From positions 682,001 through 746,000 of the forward strand of contig NIVC01000291.1 in the NCBI GenBank assembly GCA_002269645.1: a stretch of 64,000 bases of DNA, written 5' to 3'. This DNA comes from Macrostomum lignano. Taxonomy: Eukaryota. The translations under genes and the position numbers were made by a program. The notes below the pieces were generated by a model, which was not told where the DNA came from, did no database searches, and saw nothing but the letters and a program-made list of their open reading frames with translations. Shown here in pieces: positions 27,162 to 62,100 of the stretch. Position 1 is the stretch's first letter. Each line of letters begins with the position of its first letter.

Positions 27162-29231
27162 TCAGCTCGCACAACGCTTCCGAGCACTCATTGAACTCTT
27201 GTGCTGACTGTAAAACTTCACATCCCTGGTCACCTCGGCGATGTCGAAGTAGTTCGGCCTCCGCTTGGACCACCTGTAGCCGAGGTGCAGAAAGAGGTGG
27301 CGGCCCACGGTTTCCGGGCCCGTCAGGTCGTGCTTCCAGTTGCGCTCCGCGTACCGCCTGCACAGCTGCAGCCGCCTGTCGTGCAGCCGCTTGGCGGCGG
27401 CGTCGGTCGACTTCGGACTGGCTGGAAAAACAAAGCGCAGATTGCAGTGAAACTCGAGCTGGCGGGGCATGCGAGCCGTGCTGTGCACCGCATCATCTTT
27501 TAGATATGCAACCCAGACCCTGAGGCTAGTGCGATTGGGCCTCATGAGTGACCGAGACACGGTTAGAGTGACAGACATATGAGTTTAGAGTGACTGACAT
27601 ATGGGTTAGAGTGACAGACATATGGGTTTAGAGTGACTGACATATGAGTTGGAGTGACCGACACTGTGGATTAGAGTGACCGATACTGTGGATTAGAGTG
27701 ACAGACACTGTGGATTAGAGTGACCGACACTGTCGATTAGAATGACCGACGCTGTGGACTAGAGTGACAGACATTGTGAATTAGAGTGACCTAGATGCTG
27801 TGGATTAGAGTGACTAAGACACTGTGGATTAGAGTGACAGACATTGTGGATTAGAGTGATCTTTGCAGTGGATTAGAATGTTTAATGAATTTTAGGCCAG
27901 CTAAGAAAATTCTAATCAAGTTCTAGAACTAGTTTAGTTTAACTCTTTCAGTTGGCTCACACTAAAAGCTGACTTTCTGTGAGTAAAACTGTTGTTATAA
28001 TAGAACTGCCTGAATTTCCTAGAGTGACACTTTGCACTCAATAGTGATCGGTTAAAGAGTAAAGTTAAAATCGTACGGTTGCCTCGATAACTACGAGTGC
28101 ATATTTAATGGGAGCGACTCACAGCTCTCCAAAGTTCTGCACTTGCTCCTGAAGTGATGCAAACCGTCGTCAATCAGCGGGCTGAACACGGGCGGGTCCA
28201 GCAGCGTCACCACGTGCCTACTGGTGGCGTTGTCTGTCCACCAGCTCTGCAGCTGGCTGGTGAGCAGGTCGGGACCCGTGGTCGGGCCGGCGCCTCCCGT
28301 CTTGTCGTCCACTTCCATCATGGCGAACACGAGACGCAGGAAGAACGGATGTCCGGGCACGGATCCCATGGCGCTGTTCATGGCGCTGAAGTCCTTGCCG
28401 TAGAGAATCACAGCGTGCTCCTTGGCCTCCTGGTCCACGAAGGCCGTGAGGTTTTCGAGGCTCGGGAAGAACGGCTTCACGCACTCGACGTCCATGTCGA
28501 TGTAGATGCCTGCGGGTCACGGATGTTGGAGGAGCACCGTCGACTTCCATTGGAATGGATTCTGGGTAGCTACAAGCTAAGCAGAGAAATGATAATTCAG
28601 TCGGCAGTTACTCAGCTGAGGCGTGCGAGCGCTCACCTCCGTAATGATGCAGAACCATGTAGCGGATGCTGTCTCCTCGCTGCACGTGCATCTTGAAGAT
28701 GAGGAACTTCCGCATGAAGAACGGGTAGTGGTCATTGATGAAGGCAACGATGTCCTTGTCGGTCCACAGGTAGTACTCCCAGTCGGGGTTCAGCTTGAGG
28801 CAGTGTTCAATGTGCTTCCGGTATTCAGTGAAGATTCGTCGAGTCGTAAAGGTCTGGTGAATGATCTTGGGAATCGCTCCAGGTGTAACTGGGCGCGGTC
28901 CAGGCGGTATTGCAATGTTGCTAAAGTCCACTTTGGGATGCGATTCTTTACCCATGTAACTGTAGGCCAGGATTGCAACGGCCTGAAACGGTTCGGCTGC
29001 ACTGAAGGAGTGGCCTGCACAGTTTCGCTGGCAGTGTCCACTGAGCTTTGAGAAAAACGGCCACACCCGTGAATAGCCAGCTGCCCTTATAATGTCTGAA
29101 TGCATATATTGAGGCTGCATGTATTCAGTAATTAATTAGTAATAGAAAGTTCCTTTCGCACTCACCATCAGCGCCACGAATGCGGCGAGGAATTTGAAGC
29201 GACAGACCGACTGCAGAGAGCCTGGATTCAT
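27162..29231 (-). CDS. GT32 (DxD sugar-binding) glycosyltransferase copy A, type II membrane protein, 352 aa; exons 29231-29166, 28982-28637, 28509-28123, 27421-27162
   Basis: MNPGSLQSVCRFKFLAAFVALM/AVAILAY (transmembrane), then IPKIIHQT...CLKLNPDWEYYLWTD...QRGDSIRYMVLHHYGG/IYIDMDVEC...NSAMGSVPGHPFF...TTGP.LL.../RHLFLHLGY. Intron phases 0, 1, 1 and total 1059 nt. An alternative in-frame acceptor exists at 29114. Confidence 0.9.
27560..27860. repeat. 22-bp minisatellite in intron 3 of GT32-A
   Basis: GACACTGTGGATTAGAGTGACC units, the same family as 33705-34410. Confidence 0.85.
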
Positions 29232-31345: not shown

Positions 31346-31521
31346 CCCCCGCTAAAGTCTTCCAGCTCCGAGCTGTCTGCAGCCATACCGCAGGTATCTC
31401 ATCTCACGCTAAAGTCTTCCAGCTCCGAGCTGTCTGCAGCCATACCGCAGGTATCTCATCTCACGCTAAAGTCTTCCAGCTCCGAGCTGTCTGCAGCCAT
31501 ACCGCAGGTATCTCATCTCAT

Positions 31522-31564
<43 letters not shown>
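31346..31564. repeat. 57-bp repeat x3 followed by a (CT)n microsatellite
   Basis: CTAAAGTCTTCCAGCTCCGAGCTG...CTCACG x3, then (CT)~21. Confidence 0.9.
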
Positions 31565-31570
<6 letters not shown>

Positions 31571-32935: not shown

Positions 32936-33297
32936 TCAATTGCGGGGTGGACACTGTAGATGTTAACTGCTGAGGGGATATCCGAACTAATGATTCTATA
33001 AAATCAAAATCAGCTGATATTCTGGTTGAAGACAAATTTAGAAACAGACTAGCACCGAAGTACAAAGTCGCTCTGTGGTTTGGCTCAAACTTTATCTAAC
33101 TTGCAAAACTCGAACAGCCTATTCGTAATCAGAGATTTGTACCGCCTGTGCACTCAAAACACCGATATATAAAGCGGAATTCAGAGCACGAATTCCACAT
33201 AACCCAGAAACCTGGTTTAGGCACAAGTGAAACATTTGAATAATTTTGAGCAGACTACATTTCATGTACTTAATATAGATAAGGTCAGTGACTTTCA

Positions 33298-36200
33298 TCA
33301 GCTGGCACAACGCTTCCGAGCACTCATTGAACTCTTGTGCTGACTGTAAAACTTCACATCCTTGGTCACCTCGGCGATGTCGAAGTAGTTCGGCCTCCGC
33401 TTGGACCACCTGTAGCCGAGGTGCAGGAAGAGGTGGCGGCCCACGGTTTCCGGGCCCGTCAGGTCGTGCTTCCAGTTGCGCTCCGCGTACCGCCTGCACA
33501 GCTGCAGCCGCCTGTCGTGCAGCCGCTTGGCGGCGGCGTCGGTCGACTTCGGACTGGCTGGAAAACAAAGCGCAGATTGCAGTGAAACTCGAGCTGGCAG
33601 GGCATGCGAGCCGTGCTGTGCACCGCACATCTTGTAGATCTGCAACCCAGACCCTGAGGCCAGTGCGATTGGGCCTCATGAGTGACCGAGACACAGTTAG
33701 AGTGACAGACATGGGTTTAGAGTGACTGACATATTAGTTGGAGTGACCGACACTGTGGATTAGAGTGACAGACACTGTGGATTAGAGTGACCTAGATGCT
33801 GTGGATTAGAGTGACAGACACTGTGGATTAGAGTGACCGACACTGTGGATTAGAGTGACCGACACTGTGGATTAGAGTGACCGACACTGTGGATTAGAGT
33901 GACCGACACTGTGGATTAGAGTGACCGACACTGTGGATTAGAGTGATTGACATATGAGTTGAAGTGACCGACACTGTGGATTAGAGTGACCGACACTGTG
34001 GATTAGAGTGACCGACACTGTGGATTAGAGTGACCGACACTGTGGATTAGAGTGACCGACACTGTGGATTAGAGTGACCGACACTGTGGATTAGAGTGAT
34101 TGACATATGAGTTGAAGTGACCGACACTGTGGATTAGAGTGACCGACACTGTGGATTAGAGTGACCAAGACACTGCGAGTTAAAGTTACCAAGACAGTGT
34201 GGATTAGAGTGACCAAGACACTGCGAGTTAAAGTTACCAAGACACTGTGGATTAGAGTGACCAAGACACTGCGAGTTAAAGTTACCAAGACACTGTGGAT
34301 TAGAGTGACCAAGACACTGCGAGTTAAAGTTACCAAGACACTGTGGATTAGAGTGACCAAGACACTGCGAGTTAAAGTTACCAAGACACTGTGGATTAGA
34401 GTGACCGAGATGCTGTGTGCAGGGTTAGGTGAGATCGACCAGCTGTAACCACAAGTTGTGCGATTCGTCGGCAACGTGGAATGATCGAATCAATCGGAGC
34501 AACTAAAATAGAATCGACACACAAAAAAGAGTGACAAAAATGCACAGAATAATGACCCTTGCACCTTACTGACTGTTGGTTATTCAAGGAGCGAAGGGCA
34601 GCTGAAGCGGGATTCCAATGAAAGCAAGCAGAAATGAAAATCACCATCAAAGCGACTCACAGCTCTCCAAAGTTCTGCACTTGCTCCTGAAGTGATGTAA
34701 ACCGTCGTCAATCAGCGGGCTGAACACCGGCGGGTTCAGCAGCGTCACCTCGTGCCTTCTGGTGGCGTTGTCTGTACACCAGCTCTGCAGCTGGCTGGTG
34801 AGCAGGTCGGGACCCGTGGTCGGGCCGGCGCCTCCCGTCTTGTCGTCCACTTCCATCATGGCGAACACGAGACGCAGGAAGAACGGGTGTCCGGGCACGG
34901 ATCCCATGGCGCTGTTCATGGCGCTGAAGTCCTTGCCGTAGAGAATCACAGCGTGCTCCTTGGCCTCCTGGTCCACGAAGGCCGTGAGGTTTTCGAGGCT
35001 CGGGAAGAACGGCTTCACGCACTCGACGTCCATGTCGATGTAGATGCCTGCGGGTCACGGATGTTGGAGGAGCACCGTCGGCTTCCATTGGAATGGATTC
35101 TGGGTAGCTACAAGCTAAGCAGAGAAATGATAATTCAGTCGGCTGTTACTCAGCTGAGGCGTGCGAACGCTCACCTCCGTAATGATGCAGAACCATGTAG
35201 CGGATGCTGTCTGCTCGCTGCACGTGCATCTTGAAGATGAGGAACTTCCGCATGAAGAATGGGTAGTTGTCATTGATGAAGGCAACGATGTCCTTGTCGG
35301 TCCACAGGTAGTACTCCCAGTCGGGGTTCAGCTTGAGGCAGTGCTCAATGTACTTCCGGTATTCAGTGAAGACTCGCCGAGTCGTGAAAGTCTGGTGAAT
35401 GATCTTGGGAATCGCTCCAGGTGTAACTGGGCGCGGTTCGAAAGGTATTGCGATGTCTCTAAAGTCCAGTTCGGGAGGCCCTTCGTCAGTATTACGATTG
35501 TAGGCCAGGATGGCAACGACCTGCAACGATTTGAATGAAACTAAGGATCTTCCAAATGTCTCTGGCAGTTAAACTTTGTCAAATTAGAAACCCTAATGGT
35601 TTTATTGATGGATTTTGGGCTATTCTGTATTGACAGTTCATGTCTCAGGGCACAGCACACGGTTGGCTCCATCTCAAGCACTCTGCATGGCCCCTGATCA
35701 AAGCCAGCCCTAGTCAGAGTTACAAGCCAGCATGATGTGACCAAGCTGTTAAAAATGACCAGTAAGTAAGCCATAGTAGATTTTGTGCATGGTTTTGGAG
35801 TTCGGAAATGACTTAACAGTGGCGTAACAGTCGTACATTGCTCAATGTGCGCATCAACTGTATGATTGTGACAAGGATGAAGGGAGAGTTGCTGTGATAC
35901 CTAACATCAAGGAGGCTGAGATCTATGGCAGAATATTCTGGAGACTTATTTTCCCTTCATTTGTTGGCTCCGAACGAGCGGCTGAAACTGCTAGTAAAAA
36001 TGCTAGTAAATATACTGAGACTTCAGACAGAGCACACCCAGTCACACGACAGGTTAAGGTAGCATCACACCCAAACAATCTCATTCTTGACCAGCTGTGG
36101 AAGAGGAATTAAACTTGGGGTTTCCTGAGACGAGGGCTCGGACCGGAAGGTGAGAACATGTAGGCATAGTATAATTGTGCTAATGACAGTAGTAGGCACA

Positions 36201-38051
36201 GAATACACCAGAATGCTCAATCGACCGGTCGATTGAGGTATGATCGGAACTTAAAGGTGTGTCCTCGAAATGGAAACAACCAAATTGACACTCATCATCA
36301 CCTGGTTCATCATTCGCCTAGAGAATGTAGATAACTCGTATTATTATGTAGTTTTGTGCAAATTTCAAATGCTATTATAGAGCTTCTGCAGTAAGTAGTG
36401 AAAATAAGTGAAATAATGTATATTACTTATTTATTCTTCATCTCAGGAGTAATATCCATGGCTTTTTATTTCGAATTTAGATAAACGAGCTGATTGGGAG
36501 TTCTGTATTCTAGTAGGCGCAGGAGAGAAAATGAGTCATTCTGCTGCATTTTTTCATCGTAAATTTCGGGTTATTTTGACAAGTAACCCGAAAACTGCAA
36601 AATCAGGCAATAAGCTTCAGCTACACAGTAAGCTTTTGTACATGTTTATAAAATAAGAATAAGGTTTAAGGTTCAAGGGATCATCGCATCAAGAAAATGC
36701 AGCCTTATGATCAGGGCAGATGCTCACACCTACGGCGCTGTCTGCGTACTTGTGCATGTATCAGTGTGGAGTGCATGTCTTTTGGACAGCTAAAGTACAC
36801 GGTGCTGCACTTCACTGGAGCCTGCTTTTGCTGCAAAATGCAGTACATACGCTCGTATGATATGTATCGAGATGCATTGTAGAAAGTAAGCTTTTTGTTG
36901 TTTAACCAATTGATAAATATATCACACTCTGAGCAAGTTTATCAATATAGACATCAAACAAAACTGATACTTGCTGATTCACAAAGCTTACGGGGGGAAT
37001 TGCTGAGACGTCAAGGCTTACAGATGGAATTTGTCAAGGTCAGAAGCCACACGTAGTTTATACAAAAATTTGTATTCCATTCTTTGTCGGCTCCCCAACG
37101 GGGGGCGCTGATTGCTAGTTTGGTGCTAAAAACAGAAGACTTACCTTCTTGCAAATGTTTTTGCAGTTTTTACAAATTAATTCTGAAAGAACTCTTGGGA
37201 AATGATTTTGAGAAAGCTTGGCTCAACTTGGCCTCCCAGTGCTGCAACAGAGCGGACCAGTGCTGACAGCCCCTGCTCAGTGAATACCTGCATTGCCCGT
37301 GCTAACGGAAGAATTGCGCTCGCCCACTTCACTCTGCAGCCGGAGAATCGACATGAGCAGCCTGGCAAGCAGAAGCGAGCCGTTGCTCTGCTGTTGTTGA
37401 CTTCAAGCACACAAACTCATTAATGCACAGGTAAATACAAGCTTTTGGCTTACAGTTGAAGCTGCTCAGCTGCGGGGCTAGAATCAACTGCGTAGAGCAC
37501 TACATGTACTCAGCTTAGACGACTCCAAGTTTTACCGCATGTTTGAGCAGGCGAGCGCATTTTCGTGTGAGTAAATAACTAGATTTCTCGCTTAGATGGG
37601 CTTCTCAGAGCTAGAGAGTGAGCTCATAGTTGCATGAATACGGCATAATGTGTAAAAAGCTCATTAGAGTGTAAAATGCATTCTGTAGTTAGGTCGCTTG
37701 TTTGTGGGATTTGTTAAAAGCTTACAGCGGAACTACTGTGCTATCTGACTAAATATTACCTTGATTCTGTCACCTATGGCCTCAATAAATAGTAAATATG
37801 CTGGATTTGAAGAATCCAAACAGTGAGAATGCAGGGATGGGCTATTATAAATATAGCTTAGTGATCATGCCCACACAATGGAGTAGCGGAATGAAATGGC
37901 CATCATGGATGCAAATTGTCAAAATAACTTGTCCAGCTCATGGCCAACTGGTAGCGAGAGAGCATGACTCAAGCAGGGGGCTTACCAGCAGAGCAGTCAG
38001 CAAAGCGACCACTTTGAAACGGTAGGTCGATCTGAACAGCACGCGCGCCAT
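33298..38051 (-). CDS. GT32 glycosyltransferase copy B, 352 aa; exons 38051-37986, 35520-35175, 35047-34661, 33557-33298
   Basis: Exon 1 MARVLFRSTYRFKVVALLTALL|GTAAGC is 66 nt, the same length as in copy A, and joins VVAILAY to complete the transmembrane helix. Exon sizes of 346, 387 and 260 nt are identical to copy A. The DxD motif IYIDMDVEC is present. Confidence 0.87.
33705..34410. repeat. 22-bp minisatellite switching to a 48-bp (24+24) higher-order unit, intron 3 of GT32-B
   Basis: GACACTGTGGATTAGAGTGACC units, then ACCAAGACACTGCGAGTTAAAGTT/ACCAAGACACTGTGGATTAGAGTG pairs. Confidence 0.9.
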
Positions 38052-39658: not shown

Positions 39659-39990
39659 ATTTAAGTGAAATACCGACCGAAAAACCCATAGAATATCTTA
39701 TTTAAACTACTTTAATTTTGCGGAATGTATTCAGATAAATCCCGGAGCCATACTTGTATGTCTATGGTTGAAGTTGGGGATGGGGTGTGGGGGCGAAGCC
39801 CCCACATTCTTACCATAGAGAAAATTTCATTAAGAAATTTCTCGAGTCACGAAGGAAGAGAAGATAGAAGCTCGCTATATAGATACATACAATAATCCTC
39901 GCAATATGTCCGGGAAAGTGATCGATTAAATACCGCAAAATAAAATCTATGTCAATAACCTCCCTGAAAGTGAGCTTTAAAGTGGTTTAA
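39659..39990. mobile_element. Second copy of the ~335-bp dispersed repeat, directly 3' of the Crypton-like ORF
   Basis: Near-identical to 11093-11426. Confidence 0.75.
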
Positions 39991-41082
39991 ATGTTCGTTA
40001 CGTACCGGCCTTGTGAGTGTCTTCTGCTTCAGCTGTCCATGGAGTCGGCACTCCAGGCTCTGCTTCTACCAGGTCTCCTTGGCTCAGCTTGCTCAGGCTA
40101 CAGGGAGGCAGTTCTGTACAGGACGCGTGGCCACACAAGGCTCTGGCTGTACGTTGCTGTCGCTTTCAATCCAAGCATGGAGAGAAAATCTGAGTGAAGT
40201 GCGCATGAAAAGGGATGAAAGCTTCTTGGGAAGGAGCAGTCGTGTGGGGGCTGCAGAGAAGCTATTGTAGAATTAGACTGGAAAACTGATTATTGCGTAA
40301 ATGCGGAGTCAAAACATCTGACGCACGATTGGTTACTACGAGCTATCACCTCAGGAAACAGGTTTATTTATTAGAGGCAAGGTGCTGGGTACATTGGCGC
40401 ACTTAAAGCGACATTGTCACACAAGCGGCGAAAGTCATTGCTGCCCATTCCGCCGACTCCCCTGAGCAGGCACACTAGCGCGCAGATACGTACGCAGTCA
40501 TCGAGCCGGGGCCGCTGGCACAAACAGAACGCCGCGCCAGACCACGAGGCTCCAGGAGACCTGGACTGGCAAAAACAGCGAAAAGCCAAACAATCGATTT
40601 CTGACTATCTTTGAGACTGAAAGTAAAACAACAGGCAATAGGCTTATCAGGCCATAAAATTTTGCGCATGAGCTTAGTCTGACTCTCTAAAAATGGCCCC
40701 CCATGAAGGCCAAATCGCCCATTCCTGACACCATAAACTTCTAGTGGTCCTTGGCACTATCGCCTTACTTTGCGGCAGCGCCCCCGAAGCCCCCCGCAAA
40801 CAAACTGACCAAGTCAACAGGCCACAAACAGCTCTTAGTTATGCAAGGTGGGTGACAAAAATCTACGATATTCAAAACAGGTCTGTCAGCAGTTAAAAGT
40901 TTGTATTTATAAAAATGTGAGAAATAACACAGCAAACACGTGCAGAATTCTGGAGCGATTGTCACGCAAAGGACTAGCCAGAGCAGCTGAATTCCTGCAG
41001 CCGATGGGTGCCAAACCAAACAGCAGACAATGCCGCAGCGTCAAAGAAGACCGACACCCACAGCGGACTCGAAGCTTCGCAG

Positions 41083-43598
41083 TCACTGAGGCGCAAATGC
41101 CGACATCTCCTCGTCAACGTCCGACGCGGTGGAGGTCGCCGAGGCGGCCGCGCAGGCGTGCACTTTGCGCCGCTTGCCGGTGAGGTGGCCGAGCTTGCTG
41201 GACACGATCCGCTTGCCCCGGCGGGCATCGTCACCCGCGGCCAGCTCGGCGAACGGGTCGTCCGCTGCCGCTGCTGCTGCTATCGAAGAATCGACGAAAA
41301 ATGTCGGCAGAAACGGGGCAGCGGCGGCTCCGGTGGAGCTCTTGGCTGAGGGCAGATCGCCGCGCTGCCGGTGCACCGCCGCCCGGATCGGCCGCGGGAT
41401 CGCCGGCGAGGAGGCGGCGGCGGCAGCTACGGATGACGAAGCCGTCAATGGCGGAGACAGCAGCGCCAACGTAGTCGCCAGGGCGGTGGGCGGGGCGTTG
41501 GAGGCGGGCGCGGCAGACGCGGTGGCTGCCGACGTTGCAAGGCTGTCGGCGTCGTCGAAGGCGTCAGCAATGCCGCAGCCCTGGAAGGCGGCCACAACGA
41601 TGGCTTCGTCGTCCACTGCATCAAGGCTGGTGTCGCTGCCGCATCCGCCACCGAGACTGCCTTCGTCGTCGGCTTCAGCGCCGCTACCGCCGCCGCCGAT
41701 GCCGCTGGACGCTGGTGAGCCGGGCGCCACGGCAGCCGCCAACCTGCCAGCGGCCACCATGACCCGGTCTTGCCGCCCGTCGTCCTCATCATCCGGGCTC
41801 GAGCCGCCCGCCGTTGCTTTTTTCCGCTTTCGCGGCGGCCGCGGCGCCCCCCGGAGAGTCTGCGAAGCCGCCGCAGCCGCAGAGGCCGCGTCGACGAGCA
41901 TCGGGCGCGGCTGCTTGTGGCGGACGCGAACCCGACGGGAGTGGCCACCGGCGGAGCGACCCGGCGCAGCCGACATCGCGGAAGCTGCGGCAGTTCCGGC
42001 AGCGGCGGCGGACAGGGCGGCGGGGTTTACGGCTGTGCCGCCACTGCACTGAGGGGAAGCGGGCGCGGCGACTCCAGCAGCGAGTTCTGCTGAGTCCGCT
42101 GAGTCCAGTTGATGCTGCTGCTGCTGCGCCAAGGCCTGGCAACGAAGATGAGGTTTGCCACGTTCTGAGGATATTAAAAGTGCTTCCCAGTTTTGGGACC
42201 TAAGCAAGGCGCAGGTTTGAATTGGGGGCTGAAACTGCGATTGCCTACTAGAAGCAGTAGTAAGAAAAGAATGTGGAATTGTGTGTAAGAGTTTCGGCAG
42301 CGTAAAAGAGCTTCCTCAAGTCTGCGCTGCACATGCACACACACTGCCCTGCCTTCCCATAGACTCAAGCATGTACATTGTACATGCACACACTCTACCC
42401 TGCCTTCCCATAGACTCAGGCATGTACACTGTACATGCACACACTCTACCCTGCCTTCCCATAGACTCAGGCATGTACATTGCGCATGCACACACTGCGC
42501 CTCGAGGTTCGGCGCTCATGGGTGTGAATAGCAGGTGTCACTCCTGTCCCTCCTATATCTGCAGGTTTCACTATACTACTCAAAGTAGGCGGCCTCACCC
42601 GCAGACTAAGGTTGGCGAGCGCCCTGGCCGCCAGCGAGTCCTCGTCGGATTCGGCGGTGGCGGGCGTGGGCGCGGAGGCCGGGCTGGGCCGCAGGCCCCA
42701 CTGCGGCGGGTGAACAGCGGCGAACCCGGCCTGCGCTGCCACCACGACGGCGGCTGTCGCGGAGGCGGGCAACGGCAGGCAGCCGCTGACATCGCAGCCG
42801 GAGGACTCGGAGCCGCCGTCAGCAGCCGCGTCCAGCTGCTGCTGCTGCCGAATCTGACTGGATCTCCGCCTGCTGCTGGAGGGCCTGAGCAGTGCAGGCA
42901 GTTGCTGAGCACCTGCCGTGTTGTCCATTGGCTGATTGTGAGGCTGCAGAGAAAGCAGAGTTTGGATGGCTGTCAGTCATCATTGCAGCATAAAAAATCA
43001 TGCAGCACTTCACATAGAATTTTAAAGCAATTGGCGATTTCAAATTTCCTTTGGGAAATCCCTTTGGGATTAACTTTAGGAAACTACTTTTTTAAATCAA
43101 TTACAGATAGATAGATTGATAGATGCCTTGCAGCAGCTCATTTTAGATGATTTGATAGATGTAACTTTTATAGGCAATATATTTATCTTCAATAAATTTA
43201 ATTGTCAAAACTGTGACAGCCAGAATGTACACAACCAGCAAGCACCAGTGCAGCCACACTTGAAACCCCCCAACCTCTGTCTAGCTAAGGTGGGGTGTGT
43301 GCACCAGACTAGCTGGCTCGCTAAGCTGGGATGTTGGCAAAGTTTATCATGCTACCTTTTCTCACCCTTCTAGGCCCCTCAATTTTTCACAATTTGAAAA
43401 TATAAATATACATGCAAAGTAGCAAAGTAGCACAAAATCTTCATTGCTATTCCATCTATTAAAATTAAAGGCCTTCTATAAGGCTTCAAAACTATAATGT
43501 AAATAAAAAATGAACACAATTAAATAAAAGCTGTATTAAAAAATCTAACAATAAATTTATCTTAAAATGATAAAAATAAATTGATAAAGACTTACCAT
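41083..43598 (-). CDS. Unassigned low-complexity (Ala/Ser/Gly-rich) protein with basic NLS-like motifs, ~497 aa; exons 43598-43596 (ATG), 42943-42599, ~42228-41083
   Basis: ATG|GTAAGT at 43596 splices in frame to CTCTGCAG|CCTCAC (PHNQPMDNT...). The GTGAGG donor at 42598 is phase 0 and there is a phase-0 acceptor at 42228 or 42234. GC-rich codons; motifs RPPRKRKK and KRIVSSKLGHLTGKRRKVH. Confidence 0.6.
42331..42494. repeat. 51-bp repeat x3 (intronic)
   Basis: CATGCACACACT..CCTGCCTTCCCATAGACTCA.GCATGTACA x3. Confidence 0.85.
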
Positions 43599-50312: not shown

Positions 50313-50682
50313 GGTCTGGTCTGGTCTGGTCTGGTCTGGTCTGGTCTGGTCTGGTCTGGTCTGGTCTGGTCTGGTCTGGTCTGGTCTGGTCTGGTCTGGT
50401 CTGGTCTGGTCTGGTCTGGTCTGGTCTGGTCTGGTCTGGTCTGGTCTGGTCTGGTCTGGTCTGGTCTGGTCTGGTCTGGTCTGGTCTGGTCTGGTCTGGT
50501 CTGGTCTGGTCTGGTCTGGTCTGGTCTGGTCTGGTCTGGTCTGGTCTGGTCTGGTCTGGTCTGGTCTGGTCTGGTCTGGTCTGGTCTGGTCTGGTCTGGT
50601 CTGGTCTGGTCTGGTCTGGTCTGGTCTGGTCTGGTCTGGTCTGGTCTGGTCTGGTCTGGTCTGGTCTGGTCTGGTCTGGTCT
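50313..50682. repeat. Perfect (GGTCT)n pentanucleotide microsatellite, ~74 copies
   Basis: Direct observation, 370 bp. Confidence 0.97.
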
Positions 50683-51480: not shown

Positions 51481-54213
51481 ATGGAGACTGGCTTCAAGCG
51501 TCGGAACTTGAAGATTCTGGGCTCTCTGCTGATTGCCGCAGTTGTTGGGGTAAGAAACTTGAGCGAAAGTAAAAGCGACTGGTTACTCAGTTGACTGAGT
51601 TATTGAGTAAACTGGATTACGTACTTTTCAGACTTTGCTCTCAGGTGTGCTCAAACAGTGCACTAGTTCAAACTGTACTGTCAAAAGATCGCAAGTTCTG
51701 GGCTACAAAGCAATGTCCAAAGCACAATCGGTCCTCAAAAACGTTTCCTCTGTGCCAAAAATTCTTCACCAAGTGTTCGCAAGCGAGCGAGTCTATGCAA
51801 ACTACTTGCCCTTTGTCAACAGCTGCCTTAGCCGCAACCCTGACTGGCAGTACTACCTGTGGACCGACAAGACAGCCGAGAAGCTCATTGTCGATCGGTA
51901 CCCGGAGTTCCTGGCCAAATACAAGCAGTACACCGACAACTTGGAGAAGGCCGATTCTATCCGGTACATCGTGCTTCATCATATGGGCGGTGAGTGCTAA
52001 GCCGCTCGAAGGGTCCCGCAGTACTCGTAACTTCGTTCAGAGAAATGCTCATTGAGGAAGGAGTATAGCTATATTAGCAGTATGCGAAGTATGTCCCTAT
52101 GTGTATGCATGCACTGAATCGCTCAAACAGGCATTTACCTGGACATGGACGTCGAATGCATCAGGCCATTTTTCCCGGCTCTGGAGGGTATCCAGGCCTT
52201 CCTCGACCAGGAGCGGCCGGAGCAGACCAACATTGGCCTGGCCCAGCGCTACTCGGCCATGAACTCGGCCATGGGCGCCCGGCCGGGCCATCCGTTCTTC
52301 CGGCACGTCATCGACCAGCTGCGGGCCGGAACTCGAGTCGGCGAAGCGCTGCGAACCACCGGCCCGCTGGCGCTGACCTCCGCACTCGAGTCCTACAGGC
52401 AAGTTCGAGCGGCTGCCGACGTGAAACTCCTGGATCCCAAGGTGTTTTCTCCGCTGATGGTCGATATGAACAAATGGAAGAAGATATGTCGACATCTTCG
52501 TAAGTGTCGTGATTTTGGTCGGTTTGGGACCCTGCGGAACAACAAGTGCAGAATAACAAGTGCAGAATAACAAGTGCAGAATAACAAGTGCGGAATAACA
52601 AGTGCAGAATAACAAGTGCAGAATAACAAGTGCAGAATAACAAGTGCGGAATAACAAGTGCAGAATAACAAGTGCAGAATAACAAGTGCGGAATAACAAG
52701 TGCAGAATAACAAGTGCAGAATAACAAGTGCAGAATAACAAGTGCAGAATAACAAGTGCAGAATAACAAGTGCAGAAATGCTTTACGCATGCGAACAGCT
52801 ACATGTTAGCCCAGCGGACAGGGGAAACAAATTAATGTGAAAACTCGAACTGGAACATATTGCTGATCACGAGCGAGGCTTCAACAATTTTGTGTGCGAG
52901 TTTGTGCCAAAGAATAATTGCAGAGCTCCAAAAGCGTCTGGAACAGAAGTCTCCAAAGGGGGTCGCCATAGATTTTATTGTGGGGGGACAAAGCCGAGAA
53001 TTCTACATGAATAAACTCCTTCATTATTTAAGGAATAGGTGGTGTTGTTGGCATTCAATTTGGCCACACAGACAGGCACTCATTTTGACACCACAGACAG
53101 GCACTCATTTTGGCGCCACAGACAGGCACTCATTTTGGCGCCACAGACAGGCACTCATTTTGACCCCACAGACAGGCACTCATTTTGGCGCCACAGACAG
53201 GCACTCATTTTGACCCCACAGACAGGCACTCATTTTGACCCCACAGACAGGCACTAACTTTGGCGCCACAGACAGGCACCAGACAGGCACTCATTTTGGC
53301 GCTACAGACAGGCACTCATTTTGACCCCACAGACAGGCACTCATTTTGGCGCCACAGACAGGCACTCATTTTGGCGCCACAGACAGGCACTCATTTTGAC
53401 CCCACAGACAGGCAATCATTTTGGCGCCACAGACAGGCACTCATTTTGGCGCCACAGACAGGCACTCATTTTGACACCACAGACAGGCACTCATTTTGAC
53501 CCCACAGACAGGCACTAACTTTGGCGCCACAGACAGGTACCAGACAGGCACTCATTTTGGCGCCACAGACAGGCACTCATTTTGGCGCCACAGACAGGCA
53601 CTCATTTTGGCGCCACAGACAGGCACTCACTTTGACACCACAGACAGGCACTCATTTTGGCGCCACAGACAGGCAGTCATTTTGGCGCCAAGCGCACAAT
53701 GCTTTGGTGCCCTGAAGTACAATTATTGATTTCCATAACAGGTGAAAAGGTGGGGCGAGGGACAAAGCATTGGCATGTCCCCCATAGCTTTTACTGGGGT
53801 TTTGGCTGGGATTTTCAAGACTCTTGTATTACGAGAATATATTTTTTGTGAAAAAATTTTCGAATCCATTCTAGACTTTTCCAAGAACATGCTGGATTAT
53901 TATTATTTCTTTTTTAGGGTCTTACTGTAAGTAGGCTGAAACACATTTTTATCGACCGCAGATAATTTTAATTTCATTGCCAGTTTTGTCCGCCAAGTGG
54001 TCGAGCTCTTCTCGCTGGTCGCTGCAGCAGCGCGGCTGCGTCCAGCTCCAGGCCAAGGGGTGGCGCGCGGACGACAGCAACGGCAGCACTATCGGGCTGC
54101 ACCGCTTCCTGCACCTCGGCTACGACTGGATCGCCGGCAAGCAGCGACTGCCGCCCGTCAGCCTGACGAAGGCCTTTCCGGGCAGAGTGAAATTCTACGG
54201 CGGGTCTGCGTGA
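51481..54213 (+). CDS. GT32 glycosyltransferase copy C (most divergent), 341 aa; exons 51481-51549, 51632-51989, 52131-52499, 53984-54213
   Basis: METGFKRRNLKILGSLLIAAVVG/TLLSG (transmembrane), then VPKILHQVF...CLSRNPDWQYYLWTD...EKADSIRYIVLHHMGG/IYLDMDVEC...NSAMGARPGHPFF...TTGPLAL.../HRFLHLGY. Same intron positions and phases (0, 1, 1) as the other copies. Confidence 0.9.
52538..52776. repeat. 14-bp minisatellite (AACAAGTGCAGAAT)n in intron 3 of GT32-C
   Basis: Direct observation, ~17 copies. Confidence 0.95.
53063..53690. repeat. 25-bp minisatellite in intron 3 of GT32-C
   Basis: CACAGACAGGCACTCATTTTG(GCGC/ACCC) units. Confidence 0.95.
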
Positions 54214-54471: not shown

Positions 54472-57033
54472 TTAACCTTATGATTACCAGTGGCATGCTG
54501 TGCATGCCATCGTTCATTCTGTCAATTGACCATAGACAGATTTGAAGTCGGTGGGAAAGCGAGTTTAGACAGAATCATTGTGTCATGCTGTACGCTCATT
54601 ATTCCACGCTTAGGAATCATTATTTTAGGCTTCTAAAAATACATTCATGAGACAATGTGTTTGTGTATATGGTTTTGTCATAGACAATGATAAATTTTAG
54701 TCACTCGTGGCTTCGCCACTCGTGAAAAATTTATCATTGTCTACCTCCAAAACCATATACACAATCTATCATTGTCTGACTCAACCAGATGGAATGCTAC
54801 CTGGTATGCATGCCAAGGTCAAAAACTGCTTGTATTGTCATATTGCGTCGCAGTGTAACGAAACAAATAGAAAACAACATACATTGTATGTACAAAAGTA
54901 AATCTTAAGAACATAAAGGCAAATGAAGCTGCATGCAAGTGAATGAAAAGAATGCTAGCAACAGTTCGATTGCAGTTTCAGCAAAGCGCCAGCAATCAGT
55001 TAGCCGAGTGCCACTCAAAGAAGCACGGCTCAAGGCAAAGCCCAGGCTGACCGTCACAACCTTGGCAGAAGTAGACGGTCCGCTTTTTCAGTCTGCGCTG
55101 CAGGTAACAAACTCGGCAACGCTTGGTAGGCCGTTCTTGTGCTACGGTAGCGGGTAGCTTTTCCAGCCGGTGATGGATGTCTCTGGACTTAACCTGGATG
55201 GACTTAACTCTGGATCGACCATTTTCACTGCTTTCAATCAAGTGCCTTACACACCTTTCAGTGTAGTTGAGAAAGCTCATGGATCCACCTAGATGCCGGT
55301 ACACAATCCAGGAGTTGCGAACCAGTTGCTGTAGCAGAAACACCGCTAGCTTTACGAACTATTTGTGCGTTCGGCGACATGCGCTGTAAGGCTGGGCTGC
55401 GGCATCCATCCGATCCACACCTCCCATGTTCTGATTATATTGCAACATCGAGTTGGGCTTCAGCAGCTGTTGCTCCACACCACCGCGCAGTACCCGGCTA
55501 ACCAAAGAGCTAGCAGCTGTTGAAGCGGAGTCCAACAGATAGACAGTCTTTGTTCCTGAGCTTTGCCTGTCAACCAGCTTCACAGCGAGGATGTCACCAT
55601 GTCGGGCAAAGGAATGACTCGGTGGTTGCAAGAGCATATCTCGCAGAATCGGTGGAACGCCTCGGTCTTTGCGAACGGTCCCAGTTAAGGTTGTTCCTCG
55701 GGTCAGAAGGAACTTGGCCAGTCTCACTGATGAAAACCAACTGTCGCAAAAGACCCGATATCCAAAGTTCAATAGATAGACAAAGTTCTACGACGACTCT
55801 CTCACTGATTGAGAGCTGCGGCACATCGTTGCCGAACTGTTCATTTGCAATGGTGGTTGAATGTATCCGACAGTTCCACATGTAGCCTGTAGAAGACTCT
55901 GTAAGGCAGTACAACTTGATGCCAAACTTGGCTCTCTTGTTGGGCATGTACTGCTTAAAAATCAGCCTCCCTTTATAGAGCAGCAGCGCTTCATCAACGG
56001 CAATGCTTTGACCGGGCAGGTAGCTGTTCTTGCAAACAGTCTGGACCATGTCTAGGAAAGGCCTGATCTTGCACAAGGGATCATCAGCGTCGAAGTCAAG
56101 ACATTCATCGCAACGCAGCCATGTCATGATTTGTTGAAACCGCGAGCGAGGAAGCATCTTCATGCTTTGAAAGTAGGGATGAAAGTAGAACGGGTCCGTG
56201 GACCAGTAAGCCGTCACCTCCGGTTTCTGTACAACTCCGGTATATAATATAACGCCGATCACCTTCTTCATCTCAGAAACAGTGCAGGGCTTCCACGTTC
56301 TGAGCCCGTAAGGCAGTTCATCATCTCCGTGTTCTTCTTGAAACTTGGCAATATCCAGCTGCGCTCTCTTGTTTGTCCACATGCACATCTGAAGCAGCAA
56401 CTCATCGGGTAGAAACTGCTCGAAAATGGCTGTCCAGCCGTCGTCAACATCAGCAGGTACGGAGAATCCCGGATTGACTCCGTTTGCCCCGAGGAACTCG
56501 GGAAGAGAATTAGCTCGAGCATCGGTCTCTGGAGTTACTGATCTCCAATCATCGTGCATCATTCCCTGATCGTCTTCCTCCGGTCCATCGTTGCCTTCTT
56601 GATTTTCGCCACCGTCCTCTCCCTCGCTCTCAGCAGTGACAAATGAGTCATCGCTCGACTCATCGCTCGATTCGCTGTCGAGGCCCAAGTTTTGCAAGGC
56701 TTGCTTGGCTGCTTGCCGTCGCTGTCTGACCGCTTGCATTGTTGATTTGGTAAGCTGGGGTGGTGAGCTAAGGAGGCACCAGTAAAAATTCTTGAAGTTA
56801 ACTTTTCGCGCCTGTATTTGCTCTCTCTTGACTTTTTTCTAGCTTGGCCATAGACTATACTCCAGTCAAAGATGTCACTTCTCCTGTTGAGAAAGCGTTT
56901 TCTTGCCTGTCCATAATAAAGCAACTGTTTTGGAATTCTAAGTGTACAGCGCAGATATAAATTGTCTATGGCATGTCCATATCATGCAAGATAGAAATGT
57001 GGGGAAGGAATTCTGTCGTAAACAAGTGGTTAA
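54472..57033 (-). mobile_element. piggyBac (PGBD4-like) DNA transposon, ~2.56 kb, TTAA-flanked
   Basis: TTAA|CCACTTGTTTAC (read inward from 57033) and TTAA|CCTTATGATTAC (54472) form short imperfect TIRs. The left boundary is less certain than the right. Confidence 0.7.
54996..56739 (-). pseudogene. piggyBac transposase with one frameshift (~55775) and one in-frame stop (55359-55361)
   Basis: DDD triad contexts IAVDEALLLYKGR, FCDSWFS and MGGVDRMD; QYMPNKRAKFGIKLYCL; RRTHK*FVKL where the consensus has W (TGG to TAG); C-terminal CRD RCRVC...CQGC...LCLEPCFFEWH. Confidence 0.93.
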
Positions 57034-58005: not shown

Positions 58006-58049
58006 ATGAAACTGTGCTGCTCACGTGACATACTGCGGTAACCGTGTAC

Positions 58050-59235
58050 TGTTCCAGGCACTGGGAGTGGCTGGAGGTGTCTCTGTGTGTGCACTGGGAG
58101 TGGCTGGAGGTGTCTCTGTGTGTGCACTGGGAGTGGATGGAGGTGTCTGTGTGTGCACTGGGGGTGGATGGAGGTGTCTGTGTGTGCACTGGGAGTGGAT
58201 GGAGGTGTCTGTGTGTGCACTGGGGGTGGATGGCAGGTCTCTGTGTGTGCACTGGGAGTGGATGGAGGTGTCTGCGTGTGCACTGGGGGTGGATGGCAGG
58301 TGTCTCTGTGTGTGCACTGGGAGTGGCTGGAGGTGTCTCTGTGTGTGCACTGGGAGTGGATGGAGGTGTCTGCGTGTGTGCACTGGGAGTGGCTGGAGGT
58401 GTCTCTGTGTGTGCACTGGGAGTGGCTGGAGGTGTCTCTGTGTGTGCACTGGGAGTGGATGGAGGTGTCTCTGTGTACACCGGGAGTGGATGGAGGTGTC
58501 TGTGTGTGCACTGGGGGTGGATGGCAGGTCTCTGTGTGTGCACTGGGAGTGGATGGAGGTGTCTGCGTGTGCACTGGGGGTGGATGGCAGGTGTCTCTGT
58601 GTGTGCACTGGGAGTGGCTGGAGGTGTCTCTGTGTGTGCACTGGGAGTGGCTGGAGGTGTCTCTGTGTGTGCACTGGGAGTGGATGGAGGTGTCTGCGTG
58701 TGTGCACTGGGAGTGGCTGGAGGTGTCTCTGTGTGTGCACTGGGAGTGGCTGGAGGTGTCTCTGTGTGTGCACTGGGAGTGGATGGAGGTGTCTCTGTGT
58801 ACACCGGGAGTGGATGGAGGTGTCTGTGTGTGTACACCGGGAGTGGATGGAGGTGTCTCTGTGTACACCGGGAGTGGATGGAGGTGTCTGTGTGTGCACT
58901 GGGGGTGGATGGCAGGTCTCTGTGTGTGCACTGGGAGTGGATGGAGGTGTCTGCGTGTGCACTGGGGGTGGATGGCAGGTGTCTCTGTGTGTGCACTGGG
59001 AGTGGCTGGAGGTGTCTCTGTGTGTGCACTGGGAGTGGCTGGAGGTGTCTCTGTGTGTGCACTGGGAGTGGATGGAGGTGTCTGCGTGTGTGCACTGGGA
59101 GTGGCTGGAGGTGTCTCTGTGTGTGCACTGGGAGTGGATGGCAGGTGTCTTTGTGTGCACTGGGAGTGGATGGCAGGTGTCTTTGTGTGCACTGGGAGTG
59201 GATGGCAGGTGTCTGTGTGTGCACTGGGAGTGGCT
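58050..59235. repeat. ~30-bp GT-rich minisatellite with higher-order structure
   Basis: GTGTGCACTGGGAGTGG[A/C]TGGAGGTGTCT[CT] units, which explain the six long ORFs in this interval. Confidence 0.95.
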
Positions 59236-59763: not shown

Positions 59764-62100
59764 ATGCCCCGACGCATTCTTCGCCTCACCGGCGTCGCTG
59801 CTATTCTCGTGAGTAATTCCTGAGCAGGCTTGCCGTAGCAATAAATCACAAATAACTCCATCCGAGATAGCAGATAGATACTCACTGAAGGTCACTCTGC
59901 CGTGTGACCAGCAGTTCCCATTAGTTTGACCGCAACTATATGTCATGGACACTATCTAATCATTGTGAGTTCTCCCTCTCAGCCATCTCTTCCCCTTTTT
60001 TCCAAAAATTCTGTTGAGAAATTCATGTTTCTTTTTGGCCTCCAGCATCGTCATCTGGTCATCCTGGGCCGAGTAGAATTCACGCTAGAATAAGCTGCAT
60101 CTGTCTTCTGAAGCAAGATCCAGCACGTCCAGTGGAACATACTCAGGCTTTTTTTAATTCGATTCCGTTGGTAATTTTGGCTGCTGCACCCCGCCGGCTC
60201 ACAAATTTAGGCATGCAGCGCAATAATCGGATTCGAACTGCTGCTCTGGCAGCCAAGCAAGCCACGGCTTCAGAGTGGCAGCGCGAAGGTGGCCGATAAT
60301 CAGGAGCCTCGGTATGGAGCGATACCGAAGATTCTTCACCAGACCTTCGAGACTCGGAAGGTGTTCAACGAGTACAGGAAGTACATTGAGCGCTGCCTCA
60401 AGCTGAACCCCGACTGGGAGTACTACCTGTGGACGGACGAGGACATTGTGGCTTTCATCAGCGACTATTACCCGTTCTTCATGCGAAAGTACCTTTCATT
60501 CCGGATGCACGTCCAGAGAGCAGACAGCATCCGCTACATGGTTCTGCATCACTTCGGAGGTGGGTGAAGCATCCTGCTTTAGAATGCCTCGAACCTCCAA
60601 TCACTATGAAAAAGTTCAATTTAGTTCATCGATATGACATTGAATACATATAGAGGTCATTGTTTCAGGAATTGAGATCAGAATGGGTTGGTGCGAGCTA
60701 GAGCCACTGTTCTAAGAATCTGGAAGGGAGATCAGTATGGGTTGGTGCGAGCTAGAGCCACTGTTCTAAGAATCTGGAAGCGAGATTAGTATGGGTTGGT
60801 GCGAGCTAGAGCCACTGTTCTAAGAATCTGGAAGGGAGATCAGTATGGGTTGGTACGAGCTAGAGCCACTGTTCTAAGAATCTGGAAGGGAGATCAGTAT
60901 GGGTTGGTGTGAGCTAGAGCCACTGTTCTAAGAATCTGGAAGGGAGATCAGTATGGGTTGGTGTGAGCTAGAGCCACTGTTCTAAGAATCTGGAAGCGAG
61001 ATTAGTATGGGTTGGTGCGAGCTAGAGCCACTGTTCTAAGAATCTGGAAGGGAGATCAGTATGGGTTGGTACGAGCTAGAGCCACTGTTCTAAGAATCTG
61101 GAAGGGAGATCAGTATGGGTTGGTGTGAGCTAGAGCCACTGTTCTAAGAATCTGGAAGGGAGATTAGTATGGGTTGGTGCGAACTAGAGCCACTGTTCTA
61201 AGAATCTGGAAGGGATATCAGTATGGTCTCCCGACGATGAGAGTTAGGGACTCTTGCTCGTACTCTACGAACAATACGAGCTAGAGCCACTGTTCTAAGA
61301 ATCTGGAAGGAGTTCGTTTCGCACAAATGTACAGAAGTGTCCTTTCCAGGCATCTACATCGACATGGACGTCGAGTGCGTGAAGCCGTTCTTCCCGAGCC
61401 TTGAAAACCTCACGGCCTTCGTGGATCAGGAGGCCAAGGAGCACGCTGTGATTCTCTACGGCAAGGACTTCAGCGCCATGAACAGCGCCATGGGATCCGT
61501 GCCCGGACATCCGTTCTTCCTGCGTCTCGTGTTCGCCATGATGGAAGTGGACGACAGTCAACATCGGGGAGACGCTTTAGCGACCACCGGTCCCCGTTTG
61601 CTCACCAGCCAGCTGCAGAGCTGGTGGGCTGACAATGCCACTAATCGGCACCAGGTGACGCTGCTGGATCCGCAGGTGTTCAGCCCAATTATTGACGACG
61701 AGGCGCATGACTTCAAGACCATGTGCAGGCTGCTGCATGCTTGTAAGTGTTTTCGAAGTTTTAACTTTCTCTAGAATAAACAAGTGCAGTAGCCGTAAAT
61801 GATAAATGGTTCGCTATTCAAAATATTTTAGCCACACCGAATCCAAAAGATGCAACTGCTCGGCGGGTTAAGGAGATGCAGTTGCAGCTGTGCAGGCGGT
61901 ACGCGGAGCGCAACTGGAGTCGCGACCTGACGGGCCCGGAAACAGTGGGCCGCCACCTCTTCCTGCACCTCGGCTACAGGTGGAATAATTGGTTGAAGTG
62001 GAAACAAAAGCACCTTCACGCCTACTTCAGCTTTTTCGACATTCAAGACGTCGCTAAGAATGTGAATTTCTACACACAGAAAAGGAATTCTACGCTTTAA
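59764..62100 (+). CDS. GT32 glycosyltransferase copy D, 351 aa; exons 59764-59808, 60211-60559, 61350-61742, 61832-62100
   Basis: MPRRILRLTGVAAIL|GTGAGT joins TTTAG|ACSAIIGFELLLW (transmembrane). IPKILHQTF...NPDWEYYLWTD...QRADSIRYMVLHHFGG/IYIDMDVEC.../RHLFLHLGY. Phases 0, 1, 1 and total 1056 nt. Confidence 0.88.
60675..61310. repeat. 54-bp minisatellite, ~10 copies, intron 2 of GT32-D
   Basis: GTATGGGTTGGTGCGAGCTAGAGCCACTGTTCTAAGAATCTGGAAGGGAGATCA units, with no spacers. Confidence 0.95.

What the first reader, a model, noticed from the sequence alone, without database searches (positions are those of the whole stretch)
27162..62100. Four intact SUR1/Och1-type GT32 glycosyltransferases in two divergent pairs
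All four share an identical 4-exon plan: the transmembrane helix is split by a phase-0 intron and a phase-1 intron lies just before the DxD motif. They also share a distinctive C-terminal H.FLHLGY motif. The IPKIIHQT / NPDWEY.LWTD / QRADSIRY.VL.HYGGIY.DMD signature resembles fungal MIPC-synthase (SUR1/CSH1) and bacterial GT32 enzymes more than vertebrate A4GALT/A4GNT. This points to an expanded, undescribed glycolipid or mucus glycan-modifying system, possibly of ancient horizontal origin, with diversified cytoplasmic tails and stems.
Basis: partly seen in the sequence, partly recalled or inferred. Interest (0 to 1): 0.7.

Follow-up and report, generated by a model that had tools for sequence, protein, structure and literature searches.

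The report
Four flatworm GT32 glycosyltransferase gene copies
The window, from the flatworm Macrostomum lignano, carries four intact copies of a Golgi-type sugar-transferring enzyme (family GT32); they belong to an uncharacterised family shared with molluscs, ribbon worms and a brachiopod, so this is an ordinary gene-family expansion, not a new kind of system.

Summary
Four intact GT32 genes lie at 27162-29231 (A, -), 33298-38051 (B, -), 51481-54213 (C, +) and 59764-62100 (D, +). All four share one 4-exon plan: a phase-0 intron inside the transmembrane helix, a phase-1 intron just before the DMD motif, and a phase-1 intron after a conserved Cys.

The organism is Macrostomum lignano. Protein C is identical to NCBI PAA86240.1. 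Protein A is identical to residues 369-720 of a fused UniProt model.

By sequence the grouping is (A,B),D and then a distant C. The "two pairs" are pairs of orientation only.

The proteins look like type II Golgi retaining GT-A enzymes, closest in structure to yeast Och1. They are not A4GALT/A4GNT-type, because Gb3_synth scores below its cut-off. They are not SUR1-type either, because they lack the C-terminal membrane helix and fall outside the fungal clade.

They are a divergent, expanded branch (at least 14 lineages in M. lignano) of an animal family. That family is also found in molluscs, a nemertean and a brachiopod. It shares a C-terminal two-Cys plus His module of which H.FLHLGY is a local variant.

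The introns are specific to Macrostomum; in relatives the catalytic domain sits in one exon. Horizontal origin is neither shown nor excluded. Donor sugar and acceptor are unknown.

The parts
27162..29231 (-). Gene A, GT32 glycosyltransferase, 352 aa. Exons 29231-29166, 28982-28637, 28509-28123, 27421-27162. Introns 183, 127 and 701 nt, phases 0, 1, 1.
   Evidence: 100% identical to residues 369-720 of UniProt A0A1I8GYL9. PF04488 E 1.1e-17.
33298..38051 (-). Gene B, GT32 glycosyltransferase, 352 aa. Exons 38051-37986, 35520-35175, 35047-34661, 33557-33298. Introns 2465, 127 and 1103 nt, phases 0, 1, 1.
   Evidence: Exon 1 was located by a 100% tblastn match to the N-terminus of A0A1I8JD60. 98.5% identical to residues 1-343 of A0A1I8GYL9.
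51481..54213 (+). Gene C, divergent GT32 paralogue, 341 aa. Exons 51481-51549, 51632-51989, 52131-52499, 53984-54213. Introns 82, 141 and 1484 nt, phases 0, 1, 1.
   Evidence: Exact match to NCBI PAA86240.1, BOX15_Mlig018756g1.
59764..62100 (+). Gene D, GT32 paralogue, 351 aa. Exons 59764-59808, 60211-60559, 61350-61742, 61832-62100. Introns 402, 790 and 89 nt, phases 0, 1, 1. Exon 1 is supported by ORF and splice consensus only.
   Evidence: Best public proteins are only 72-74% identical.
28490..28498 (-). DMD (DxD) catalytic motif of A. The same codons lie at 35028-35036 (B, -), 52142-52150 (C, +) and 61361-61369 (D, +).
   Evidence: Och1 has the same D187-M188-D189 (PMC12312940).
27276..27299 (-). 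C-terminal His motif H.FLHLGY of A. Also at 33412-33435 (B, -), 54100-54123 (C, +) and 61954-61977 (D, +).
   Evidence: It corresponds to HHWVHTY in molluscs and VHHW.GTW in bacteria.
27067..28993 (-). Block of A homologous to B (33178-35531), 89-95% identical. It covers exons 2-4 and introns 2-3 and ends 11 nt upstream of exon 2. The first exons and first introns are not alignable.
   Evidence: Per-region dS and dN.
61350..61555 (+). Gene-conversion tract. The first 206 nt of D exon 3 differ from A (28509-28304) at 2 positions, while the flanking introns do not align.
   Evidence: Over alignment columns 131-205 (end of exon 2 plus this tract) dS is 0.117, against 1.0 in the stretch before it.

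Best explanation
These are four functional paralogues in Macrostomum lignano. Each encodes a type II (N-terminal signal-anchor) lumenal glycosyltransferase of CAZy family GT32.

Shown:
- A GT-A catalytic domain with a DMD motif and a C-terminal His motif.
- The closest solved structures are the three known GT32 structures, led by yeast Och1.
- The genes belong to a divergent, Macrostomum-expanded branch of an animal GT32 family. That family is also present in molluscs, a nemertean and a brachiopod, and is marked by a C-terminal two-Cys plus His module.

Inferred:
- They sit in the Golgi.
- They bind a nucleotide sugar and Mn2+ through DMD and the C-terminal His.
- They add an alpha-linked sugar, with retention of configuration, to a lumenal glycan on a glycoprotein or glycolipid.
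- The donor is most likely GDP-mannose, by analogy with Och1 and SUR1. A UDP-hexose is not excluded.

The copies arose by local duplication. Gene conversion keeps their catalytic parts alike, while tails, anchors and stems diverge. That points to differences in localisation or expression, not in chemistry, for A, B and D. C is old enough to differ in substrate.
For: - Pfam PF04488 scores 63-70 bits against a cut-off of 23.
- The AlphaFold model of C has pLDDT 84.8, with the catalytic domain mostly above 90.
- Foldseek ranks Och1 9n3s first (E 4e-11), then YeGT and PaToxG. The Och1 paper names these as the only other GT32 structures.
- A PDB profile search gives Och1 at E 1.2e-18.
- Each protein has a single N-terminal hydrophobic segment and carries N-glycosylation sequons in the predicted lumenal part.
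- dN/dS is 0.19 in the part of the core compared between A and D, and 0.24 over the catalytic and C-terminal part of A against B. There are no stops or frameshifts.
- The window proteins align end to end with a mollusc/nemertean profile built without Macrostomum, at 224-237 bits.
- A profile of the C-terminal module alone scores 30.8 (A, B), 21.5 (D) and 11.5 (C) bits. The maximum over 3000 shuffles is 8.9, and fungi score at most 1.1.
- hhalign scores are 486 and 458 against the two animal subfamilies over 286 and 277 columns. They are 403 against bacteria and 380 against fungi, over the core only.
- Named full-length relatives are Mollusca, Lineus and M. lignano. Lingula matches the core but ends in a short bacterial/SUR1-like tail.
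Against: - No expression or enzyme data were available here. Donor, acceptor and localisation are inferences.
- Gene C has HQV where the others have HQT. The Thr corresponds to an Och1 residue proposed to contact the nucleotide.
- In my NJ trees the Macrostomum clade does not join the other animal subfamilies. Deep nodes have under 35% support, and core-only scores against bacterial proteins are nearly as high as against molluscs. Placement in the animal family therefore rests mainly on the shared C-terminal module and architecture.
- D's exon 1 is unverified.
Confidence: 0.8

Rival explanations
1. They are animal counterparts of fungal MIPC synthase (SUR1/CSG1, CSH1) and mannosylate an inositol-phosphoceramide-type lipid. 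This is the reader's lead, and it matches NCBI's automatic names for mollusc relatives.
For: They share GT32 motifs with SUR1. Mollusc and brachiopod relatives are auto-named 'CSH1-like' or 'inositol phosphoceramide mannosyltransferase 2-like'. Fungal SUR1-clade proteins are clear homologues, at about E 1e-45.
Against: The fungal clade has 98% bootstrap support and excludes them. Scores are lowest against the fungal profile: 147-158 bits against 214-237, and 380 against 486 in hhalign. The fungal enzymes have a second, C-terminal membrane helix that is absent here. The fungal proteins lack the two-Cys module. From general knowledge, animals are not known to make the IPC substrate.
Confidence: 0.07
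2. The family entered animals by ancient horizontal transfer from bacteria into a spiralian ancestor, and later gained introns and expanded in Macrostomum.
For: Among named strong hits the family is seen only in spiralian phyla. The catalytic domain is encoded without introns in Sinanodonta, Lineus and Octopus. Core similarity to bacterial multidomain GT32 proteins, for example a cyanobacterial one, is almost as high as to molluscs. The Macrostomum introns are lineage-specific.
Against: Single-exon coding regions are common among Golgi glycosyltransferases, so they are weak evidence. Deep tree nodes are unresolved. GT32 is also native to fungi, so an old eukaryotic origin with losses fits equally well. 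The hit lists show only the top 120-150 proteins, so absence from other animal phyla is not established.
Confidence: 0.15
3. They are orthologues of animal A4GALT/A4GNT, the alpha-1,4-galactosyl and alpha-1,4-N-acetylglucosaminyl transferases, as some UniProt names for M. lignano paralogues imply.
For: UniProt names such as 'Alpha-1,4-N-acetylglucosaminyltransferase' appear on paralogues. They share the PF04488 domain.
Against: PF04572 (Gb3_synth), which marks that group, is absent in C and below its cut-off in D (14.1 against 22.3 bits). A bacterial control passes at 25.9 bits. No named A4GALT/A4GNT protein appeared among the best hits.
Confidence: 0.05
4. Some of the four are decaying duplicates that merely still look intact.
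For: A, B and D have no correct stand-alone model in public protein sets. The region is rich in minisatellites and holds a transposase remnant.
Against: All four have open frames and canonical splice sites, and all catalytic motifs are kept. dN/dS is 0.19-0.24 in the catalytic part. The 4-exon plan is preserved.
Confidence: 0.05

Closest known systems
Yeast Och1 (initiation-specific alpha-1,6-mannosyltransferase, GT32; PDB 9N3S)
   Same: Best sequence and structure match in the PDB. Type II membrane protein with a GT-A fold and the same D-M-D motif. It also shares the HQT, WTD and D..RY motifs in the aligned N-terminal half.
   Different: Only about 15% identity over the fold, and the sequence match covers only the first 130 or so residues of the domain. 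Och1 has no two-Cys C-terminal module. Its N-glycan acceptor need not apply here.
Fungal MIPC synthase SUR1/CSG1 and CSH1 (GT32)
   Same: PF04488-only architecture and similar core motifs. Identity is 36-44% over the core, 40-53% of the length.
   Different: A separate clade with 98% support. The fungal proteins have a C-terminal membrane helix and lack the two-Cys module. The substrate is not expected in animals.
Uncharacterised spiralian GT32 proteins, such as Sinanodonta woodiana ACJMK2_044486, Lineus longissimus LOC135494083 and LOC135489082, Octopus bimaculoides LOC106875328, and Mizuhopecten 'CSH1-like'
   Same: End-to-end alignment, type II architecture, and a C-terminal module with two conserved Cys, an H-x-[FW]-x-H motif and a VKFY-like tail.
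   Different: Only 25-34% identical. Their catalytic domain is encoded in one exon, whereas the Macrostomum genes have three introns. Their function is also unknown.
Animal A4GALT/A4GNT (GT32 with the Gb3_synth domain)
   Same: Same CAZy family, with a DxD-containing PF04488 region.
   Different: The PF04572 Gb3_synth region is not detected above threshold.

Membership tests
CAZy GT32 / Pfam PF04488 (Gly_transf_sug) | PF04488 match above the gathering score | tested here: met
   63.5-70.2 bits against a cut-off of 23 in all four.
CAZy GT32 / Pfam PF04488 (Gly_transf_sug) | DxD motif with a hydrophobic middle residue, typical of retaining enzymes | tested here: met
   DMD in all four. Och1 has D187-M188-D189.
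CAZy GT32 / Pfam PF04488 (Gly_transf_sug) | GT-A fold closest to solved GT32 structures | tested here: met
   Model pLDDT 84.8. The top Foldseek hits are the three GT32 structures 9n3s, 8ovt/8ovs and 4mix. Tested on protein C only.
CAZy GT32 / Pfam PF04488 (Gly_transf_sug) | Retaining alpha-glycosyl transfer from a nucleotide sugar | not testable with these tools
   Needs an enzyme assay.
Fungal MIPC synthase (SUR1/CSG1, CSH1) | Falls within the fungal SUR1/CSH1 clade | tested here: not met
   The fungal clade has 98% bootstrap support without them. Profile scores are lowest against fungi.
Fungal MIPC synthase (SUR1/CSG1, CSH1) | Additional C-terminal membrane helix after the catalytic domain | tested here: not met
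   The hydropathy scan finds one N-terminal segment in A-D. It finds a second segment at about 270-314 in four fungal members.
Fungal MIPC synthase (SUR1/CSG1, CSH1) | IPC substrate and Csg2-type partner present in the organism | not tested
   I did not search M. lignano for IPC synthase or Csg2.
Animal A4GALT/A4GNT | Gb3_synth (PF04572) region after the DxD region | tested here: not met
   No hit in C. D scores 14.1 bits against a cut-off of 22.3. A bacterial control scores 25.9. A and B gave no PF04572 hit at E up to 0.01.
Spiralian animal GT32 family (unnamed; auto-named 'CSH1-like') | End-to-end match to a profile built from mollusc and nemertean members only | tested here: met
   224-237 bits. 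A, B and D cover profile positions 47-57 to 334-335 of 337; C covers 15-311. hhalign aligns 286 columns.
Spiralian animal GT32 family (unnamed; auto-named 'CSH1-like') | C-terminal module with two conserved Cys and H-x-[FW]-x-H | tested here: met
   A and B 30.8, D 21.5, C 11.5 bits, against a maximum of 8.9 in 3000 shuffles and 1.1 in fungi. C is marginal.
Spiralian animal GT32 family (unnamed; auto-named 'CSH1-like') | Groups with the other animal members in a phylogeny | tested here: inconclusive
   NJ with 100 bootstraps gives the Macrostomum clade 82%, but its link to other groups has under 35% support.

The most novel reading that the evidence does not exclude
The spiralian GT32 family, with its extra two-Cys C-terminal module, makes a lineage-specific alpha-linked glycan whose enzyme has never been identified. 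One example would be the alpha-mannose of the mannose-containing glycolipid cores described in molluscs. On this reading the family was acquired from bacteria in a spiralian ancestor, then gained introns and expanded to 14 or more lineages in Macrostomum. The paralogues would be retargeted by swapping tails and stems, while gene conversion holds the catalytic core constant.
Probability: 0.1. Interest if true: 0.55.

Novelty: new member of a known kind. Interest (0 to 1): 0.28.

Why it matters
It gives corrected gene models for a tandem cluster that public annotation fuses (B+A) or misses (D). It also defines an uncharacterised animal branch of GT32 spread across spiralian phyla, with a recognisable C-terminal module. 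Macrostomum lignano supports RNAi and transgenesis. It could therefore be a practical system for finding what this family does, and what is learned there could be tested in molluscs and nemerteans. In itself, a cluster of glycosyltransferase paralogues is ordinary.

Tried and rejected
- Two alternative first exons for B close to exon 2 (35774-35724 and 36084-36016) gave open models. I dropped them once a homologue showed the true exon at 38051-37986.
I reran it with database ids only.
- NCBIfam gave no hits.
- Literature searches on Macrostomum glycosyltransferases, GT32 with horizontal transfer, and 'inositol phosphoceramide mannosyltransferase' found nothing relevant.
- Midpoint-rooted NJ trees did not resolve the deep branching. 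I used profile-profile and module-specific scores instead.
- High ranks of long multidomain proteins in the representative search came from two GT32 domains per protein, not from closeness.
- The PDB profile search also listed the glycosyltransferase domains of large bacterial toxins as weak partial matches. I did not follow these up.
Full report
**What is there**

A motif scan and six-frame reading locate exactly four related loci: two on the minus strand and two on the plus strand. A tblastn search with the final proteins finds no further fragments.

I built spliced models for all four. Each has four coding exons with GT-AG introns of phases 0, 1 and 1.
- The first intron interrupts the single N-terminal hydrophobic helix.
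- The second falls between HHxGG and IYxDMD.
- The third follows a conserved Cys by five to six residues.

Exon lengths are nearly the same in the four genes:
- A and B: 66/346/387/260
- C: 69/358/369/230
- D: 45/349/393/269

Intron lengths differ widely, from 82 to 2465 nt.

For B, the first exon is not next to exon 2. It lies at 38051-37986. I found it only because a UniProt model of a near-identical copy begins MARVLFRSTYRFKVVALLTALL, which matches the window 100% there and is followed by a GTAAGC donor in phase 0.

**Organism and support for the models**

Protein C is identical to NCBI PAA86240.1 (BOX15_Mlig018756g1) of Macrostomum lignano, on a 760-kb contig. Protein A is identical over all 352 residues to residues 369-720 of UniProt A0A1I8GYL9. 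B is 98.5% identical to residues 1-343 of the same entry. That entry, and A0A1I8JD60, fuse B and A into one protein.

D has no correct public model; the best matches are 72-74% identical. Its exon 2 start coincides with the start of a partial D-like protein. Its exon 1 rests on the ORF, a GTGAGT donor and completion of the membrane helix.

**Relationships among the four**
- A and B are close: dS 0.13 overall, and 0.054 in the catalytic part.
- D is their sister, at dS 0.57.
- C is distant: dS above 1.3 and about 44% amino-acid identity.

So the "two pairs" are pairs of orientation. B and C point away from each other across 13.4 kb.

The A/B homology block runs from just past the stop codon to 11 nt upstream of exon 2. 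The first exons, first introns and the stem region are strongly diverged: stem dN is 0.31 against 0.013 in the catalytic part.

D carries a tract at the start of exon 3 that differs from A at 2 of 206 positions. Over alignment columns 131-205, which span the end of exon 2 and this tract, dS is 0.117 against 1.0 in the stretch before it. The introns beside the tract do not align. This is gene conversion, or an equivalent homogenisation limited to coding sequence.

dN/dS is 0.19-0.24 in the catalytic parts, and all motifs are intact. The genes therefore look functional.

**What the proteins are**

All four match Pfam PF04488 well above threshold and nothing else above threshold.

An AlphaFold model of C is confident over the catalytic domain: mean pLDDT is 84.8, and 243 residues are at 90 or above. 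Its best structural matches are yeast Och1 (9N3S), then YeGT and PaToxG. The Och1 paper states that those are the only other GT32 structures. It describes Och1 as a retaining GT-A enzyme with DxD at D187-M188-D189 (PMC12312940). The window proteins have the same D-M-D.

A profile search of PDB sequences gives Och1 at E 1.2e-18. The alignment covers the IP.I.HQT, W.D and D..RY..L...GG.Y.DMD motifs.

A hydropathy scan finds one N-terminal segment and none at the C-terminus. N-glycosylation sequons lie in the predicted lumenal part.

I infer type II Golgi enzymes that transfer an alpha-linked sugar from a nucleotide sugar, with Mn2+ held by DMD and the C-terminal His. The donor and acceptor cannot be read from the sequence.

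**Which GT32 branch**

The A4GALT/A4GNT marker domain PF04572 is absent in C and below its cut-off in D, while a bacterial control passes.

Fungal SUR1/CSH1 proteins form a 98%-supported clade that excludes the window genes. They give the lowest profile scores. They carry a C-terminal membrane helix that the window proteins lack.

Three homologue searches and one exhaustive representative search were run. Every named protein that matches the profile end to end comes from one of these groups:
- Mollusca: bivalves, gastropods and Octopus
- the nemertean Lineus longissimus
- M. lignano itself

A brachiopod protein (Lingula anatina, 'CSH1-like') was also found. It matches the core but ends in a short bacterial/SUR1-like His motif and lacks the long C-terminal module.

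These animal proteins share a C-terminal extension with two conserved Cys, an H-x-[FW]-x-H motif and a VKFY-like tail. A profile of that extension, built from mollusc and nemertean proteins only, gives these scores:
- A and B: 30.8 bits
- D: 21.5 bits
- C: 11.5 bits
- maximum over 3000 shuffles: 8.9 bits
- fungi: at most 1.1 bits

Profile-profile comparison aligns the Macrostomum clade end to end with both animal subfamilies (scores 486 and 458). It aligns only over the core with bacteria (403) and fungi (380).

It corresponds to VHHW.GTW in bacteria.

M. lignano holds at least 14 lineages of the family below 90% identity.

**Exon plan in context**

Two further M. lignano paralogues have the same three introns. 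One is about 45% identical. The other sits low in the clade and has one extra intron.

In relatives the catalytic domain is uninterrupted:
- In Sinanodonta and two Lineus genes the whole coding sequence, or all of it but the first 30 or so residues, is one exon.
- Octopus has one phase-1 intron in the cytoplasmic tail, ahead of the membrane helix.
- Lingula has one intron, near residue 270.

The 4-exon plan is therefore a Macrostomum-lineage feature, not an ancestral one.

An environmental contig encoding the closest non-lignano relative lacks intron 2. It has a GTGAGT donor in phase 1 at the intron 3 position.

**Origin**

NJ trees with bootstrap do not resolve how the Macrostomum clade, the two other animal subfamilies, bacteria and fungi are related. 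Core-only scores against bacterial multidomain proteins nearly equal those against molluscs.

A spiralian-wide distribution fits vertical descent within animals. A much older transfer from bacteria is neither supported nor excluded.

I found no paper on this animal family.

**Verdict**

These are GT32 enzymes of the Och1/SUR1 domain type, and the family is expanded and uncharacterised. But they are not SUR1-like in particular, the motif is not unique to them, and they sit in a family spread over several animal phyla.

This is a new set of members of a known kind and is of modest interest.

Noticed in passing
window 61350-61555 vs 28304-28509 and 34842-35047: D and A/B are 99% identical over the first 206 nt of exon 3. 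High identity continues across the exon 2/3 junction in the coding sequence, yet the introns beside it are unalignable (127 against 790 nt). A second patch of 93-98% identity lies in exon 4. The homogenisation appears limited to coding sequence.
   Followed up: partly
window 33298-38051 and 27162-29231 (UniProt A0A1I8GYL9, A0A1I8JD60): Public models fuse B and the downstream gene A into one 720 or 689 aa protein. They splice from inside B's last exon into A's upstream region. This is either a mis-prediction or a sign of read-through transcripts across the tandem pair.
   Followed up: partly
window 16300-23304 (+): A GC-rich block (62-67% GC, against 30-50% nearby) holds a large gene with AAA_16/NACHT and NWD1-like winged-helix domains. 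A 1002-codon ORF follows, containing a CAA/polyglutamine run of about 75 units at 20947-21172.
   Followed up: partly
window 54996-56739 (-): A piggyBac-type transposase (DDE_Tnp_1_7 plus its zinc finger) lies between genes C and D. It is split over at least three ORFs, so it is probably a decayed copy.
   Followed up: partly
window 27563-27859, 33697-34408, 52533-52777, 53050-53690, 60674-61226, 50313-50682, 58058-59233: Minisatellites fill the introns and upstream regions of the four genes. The same 22-bp unit sits in intron 3 of both A and B. Units of 14 and 25 bp lie in intron 3 of C, and a 54-bp unit in intron 2 of D. GGTCT x74 lies upstream of C, and a 33-bp unit x36 upstream of D.
   Followed up: no
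L004 (JGI metagenome 3300040801 contig, 1082 nt): The closest non-lignano relative (50% identical to D) is encoded without intron 2. It ends at a GTGAGT donor in phase 1, exactly at the Macrostomum intron 3 position. It probably comes from another small invertebrate in an environmental sample.
   Followed up: partly
window 11094-11429 and 39659-39993: A 337-bp element is present twice at 96% identity, far from the GT32 genes. It is probably a dispersed repeat.
   Followed up: no
window 41083-42207 (-): A 374-codon Ala/Ser-rich ORF lies in a GC-rich patch between B and C. It has no Pfam match and its status as a gene is unknown.
   Followed up: partly
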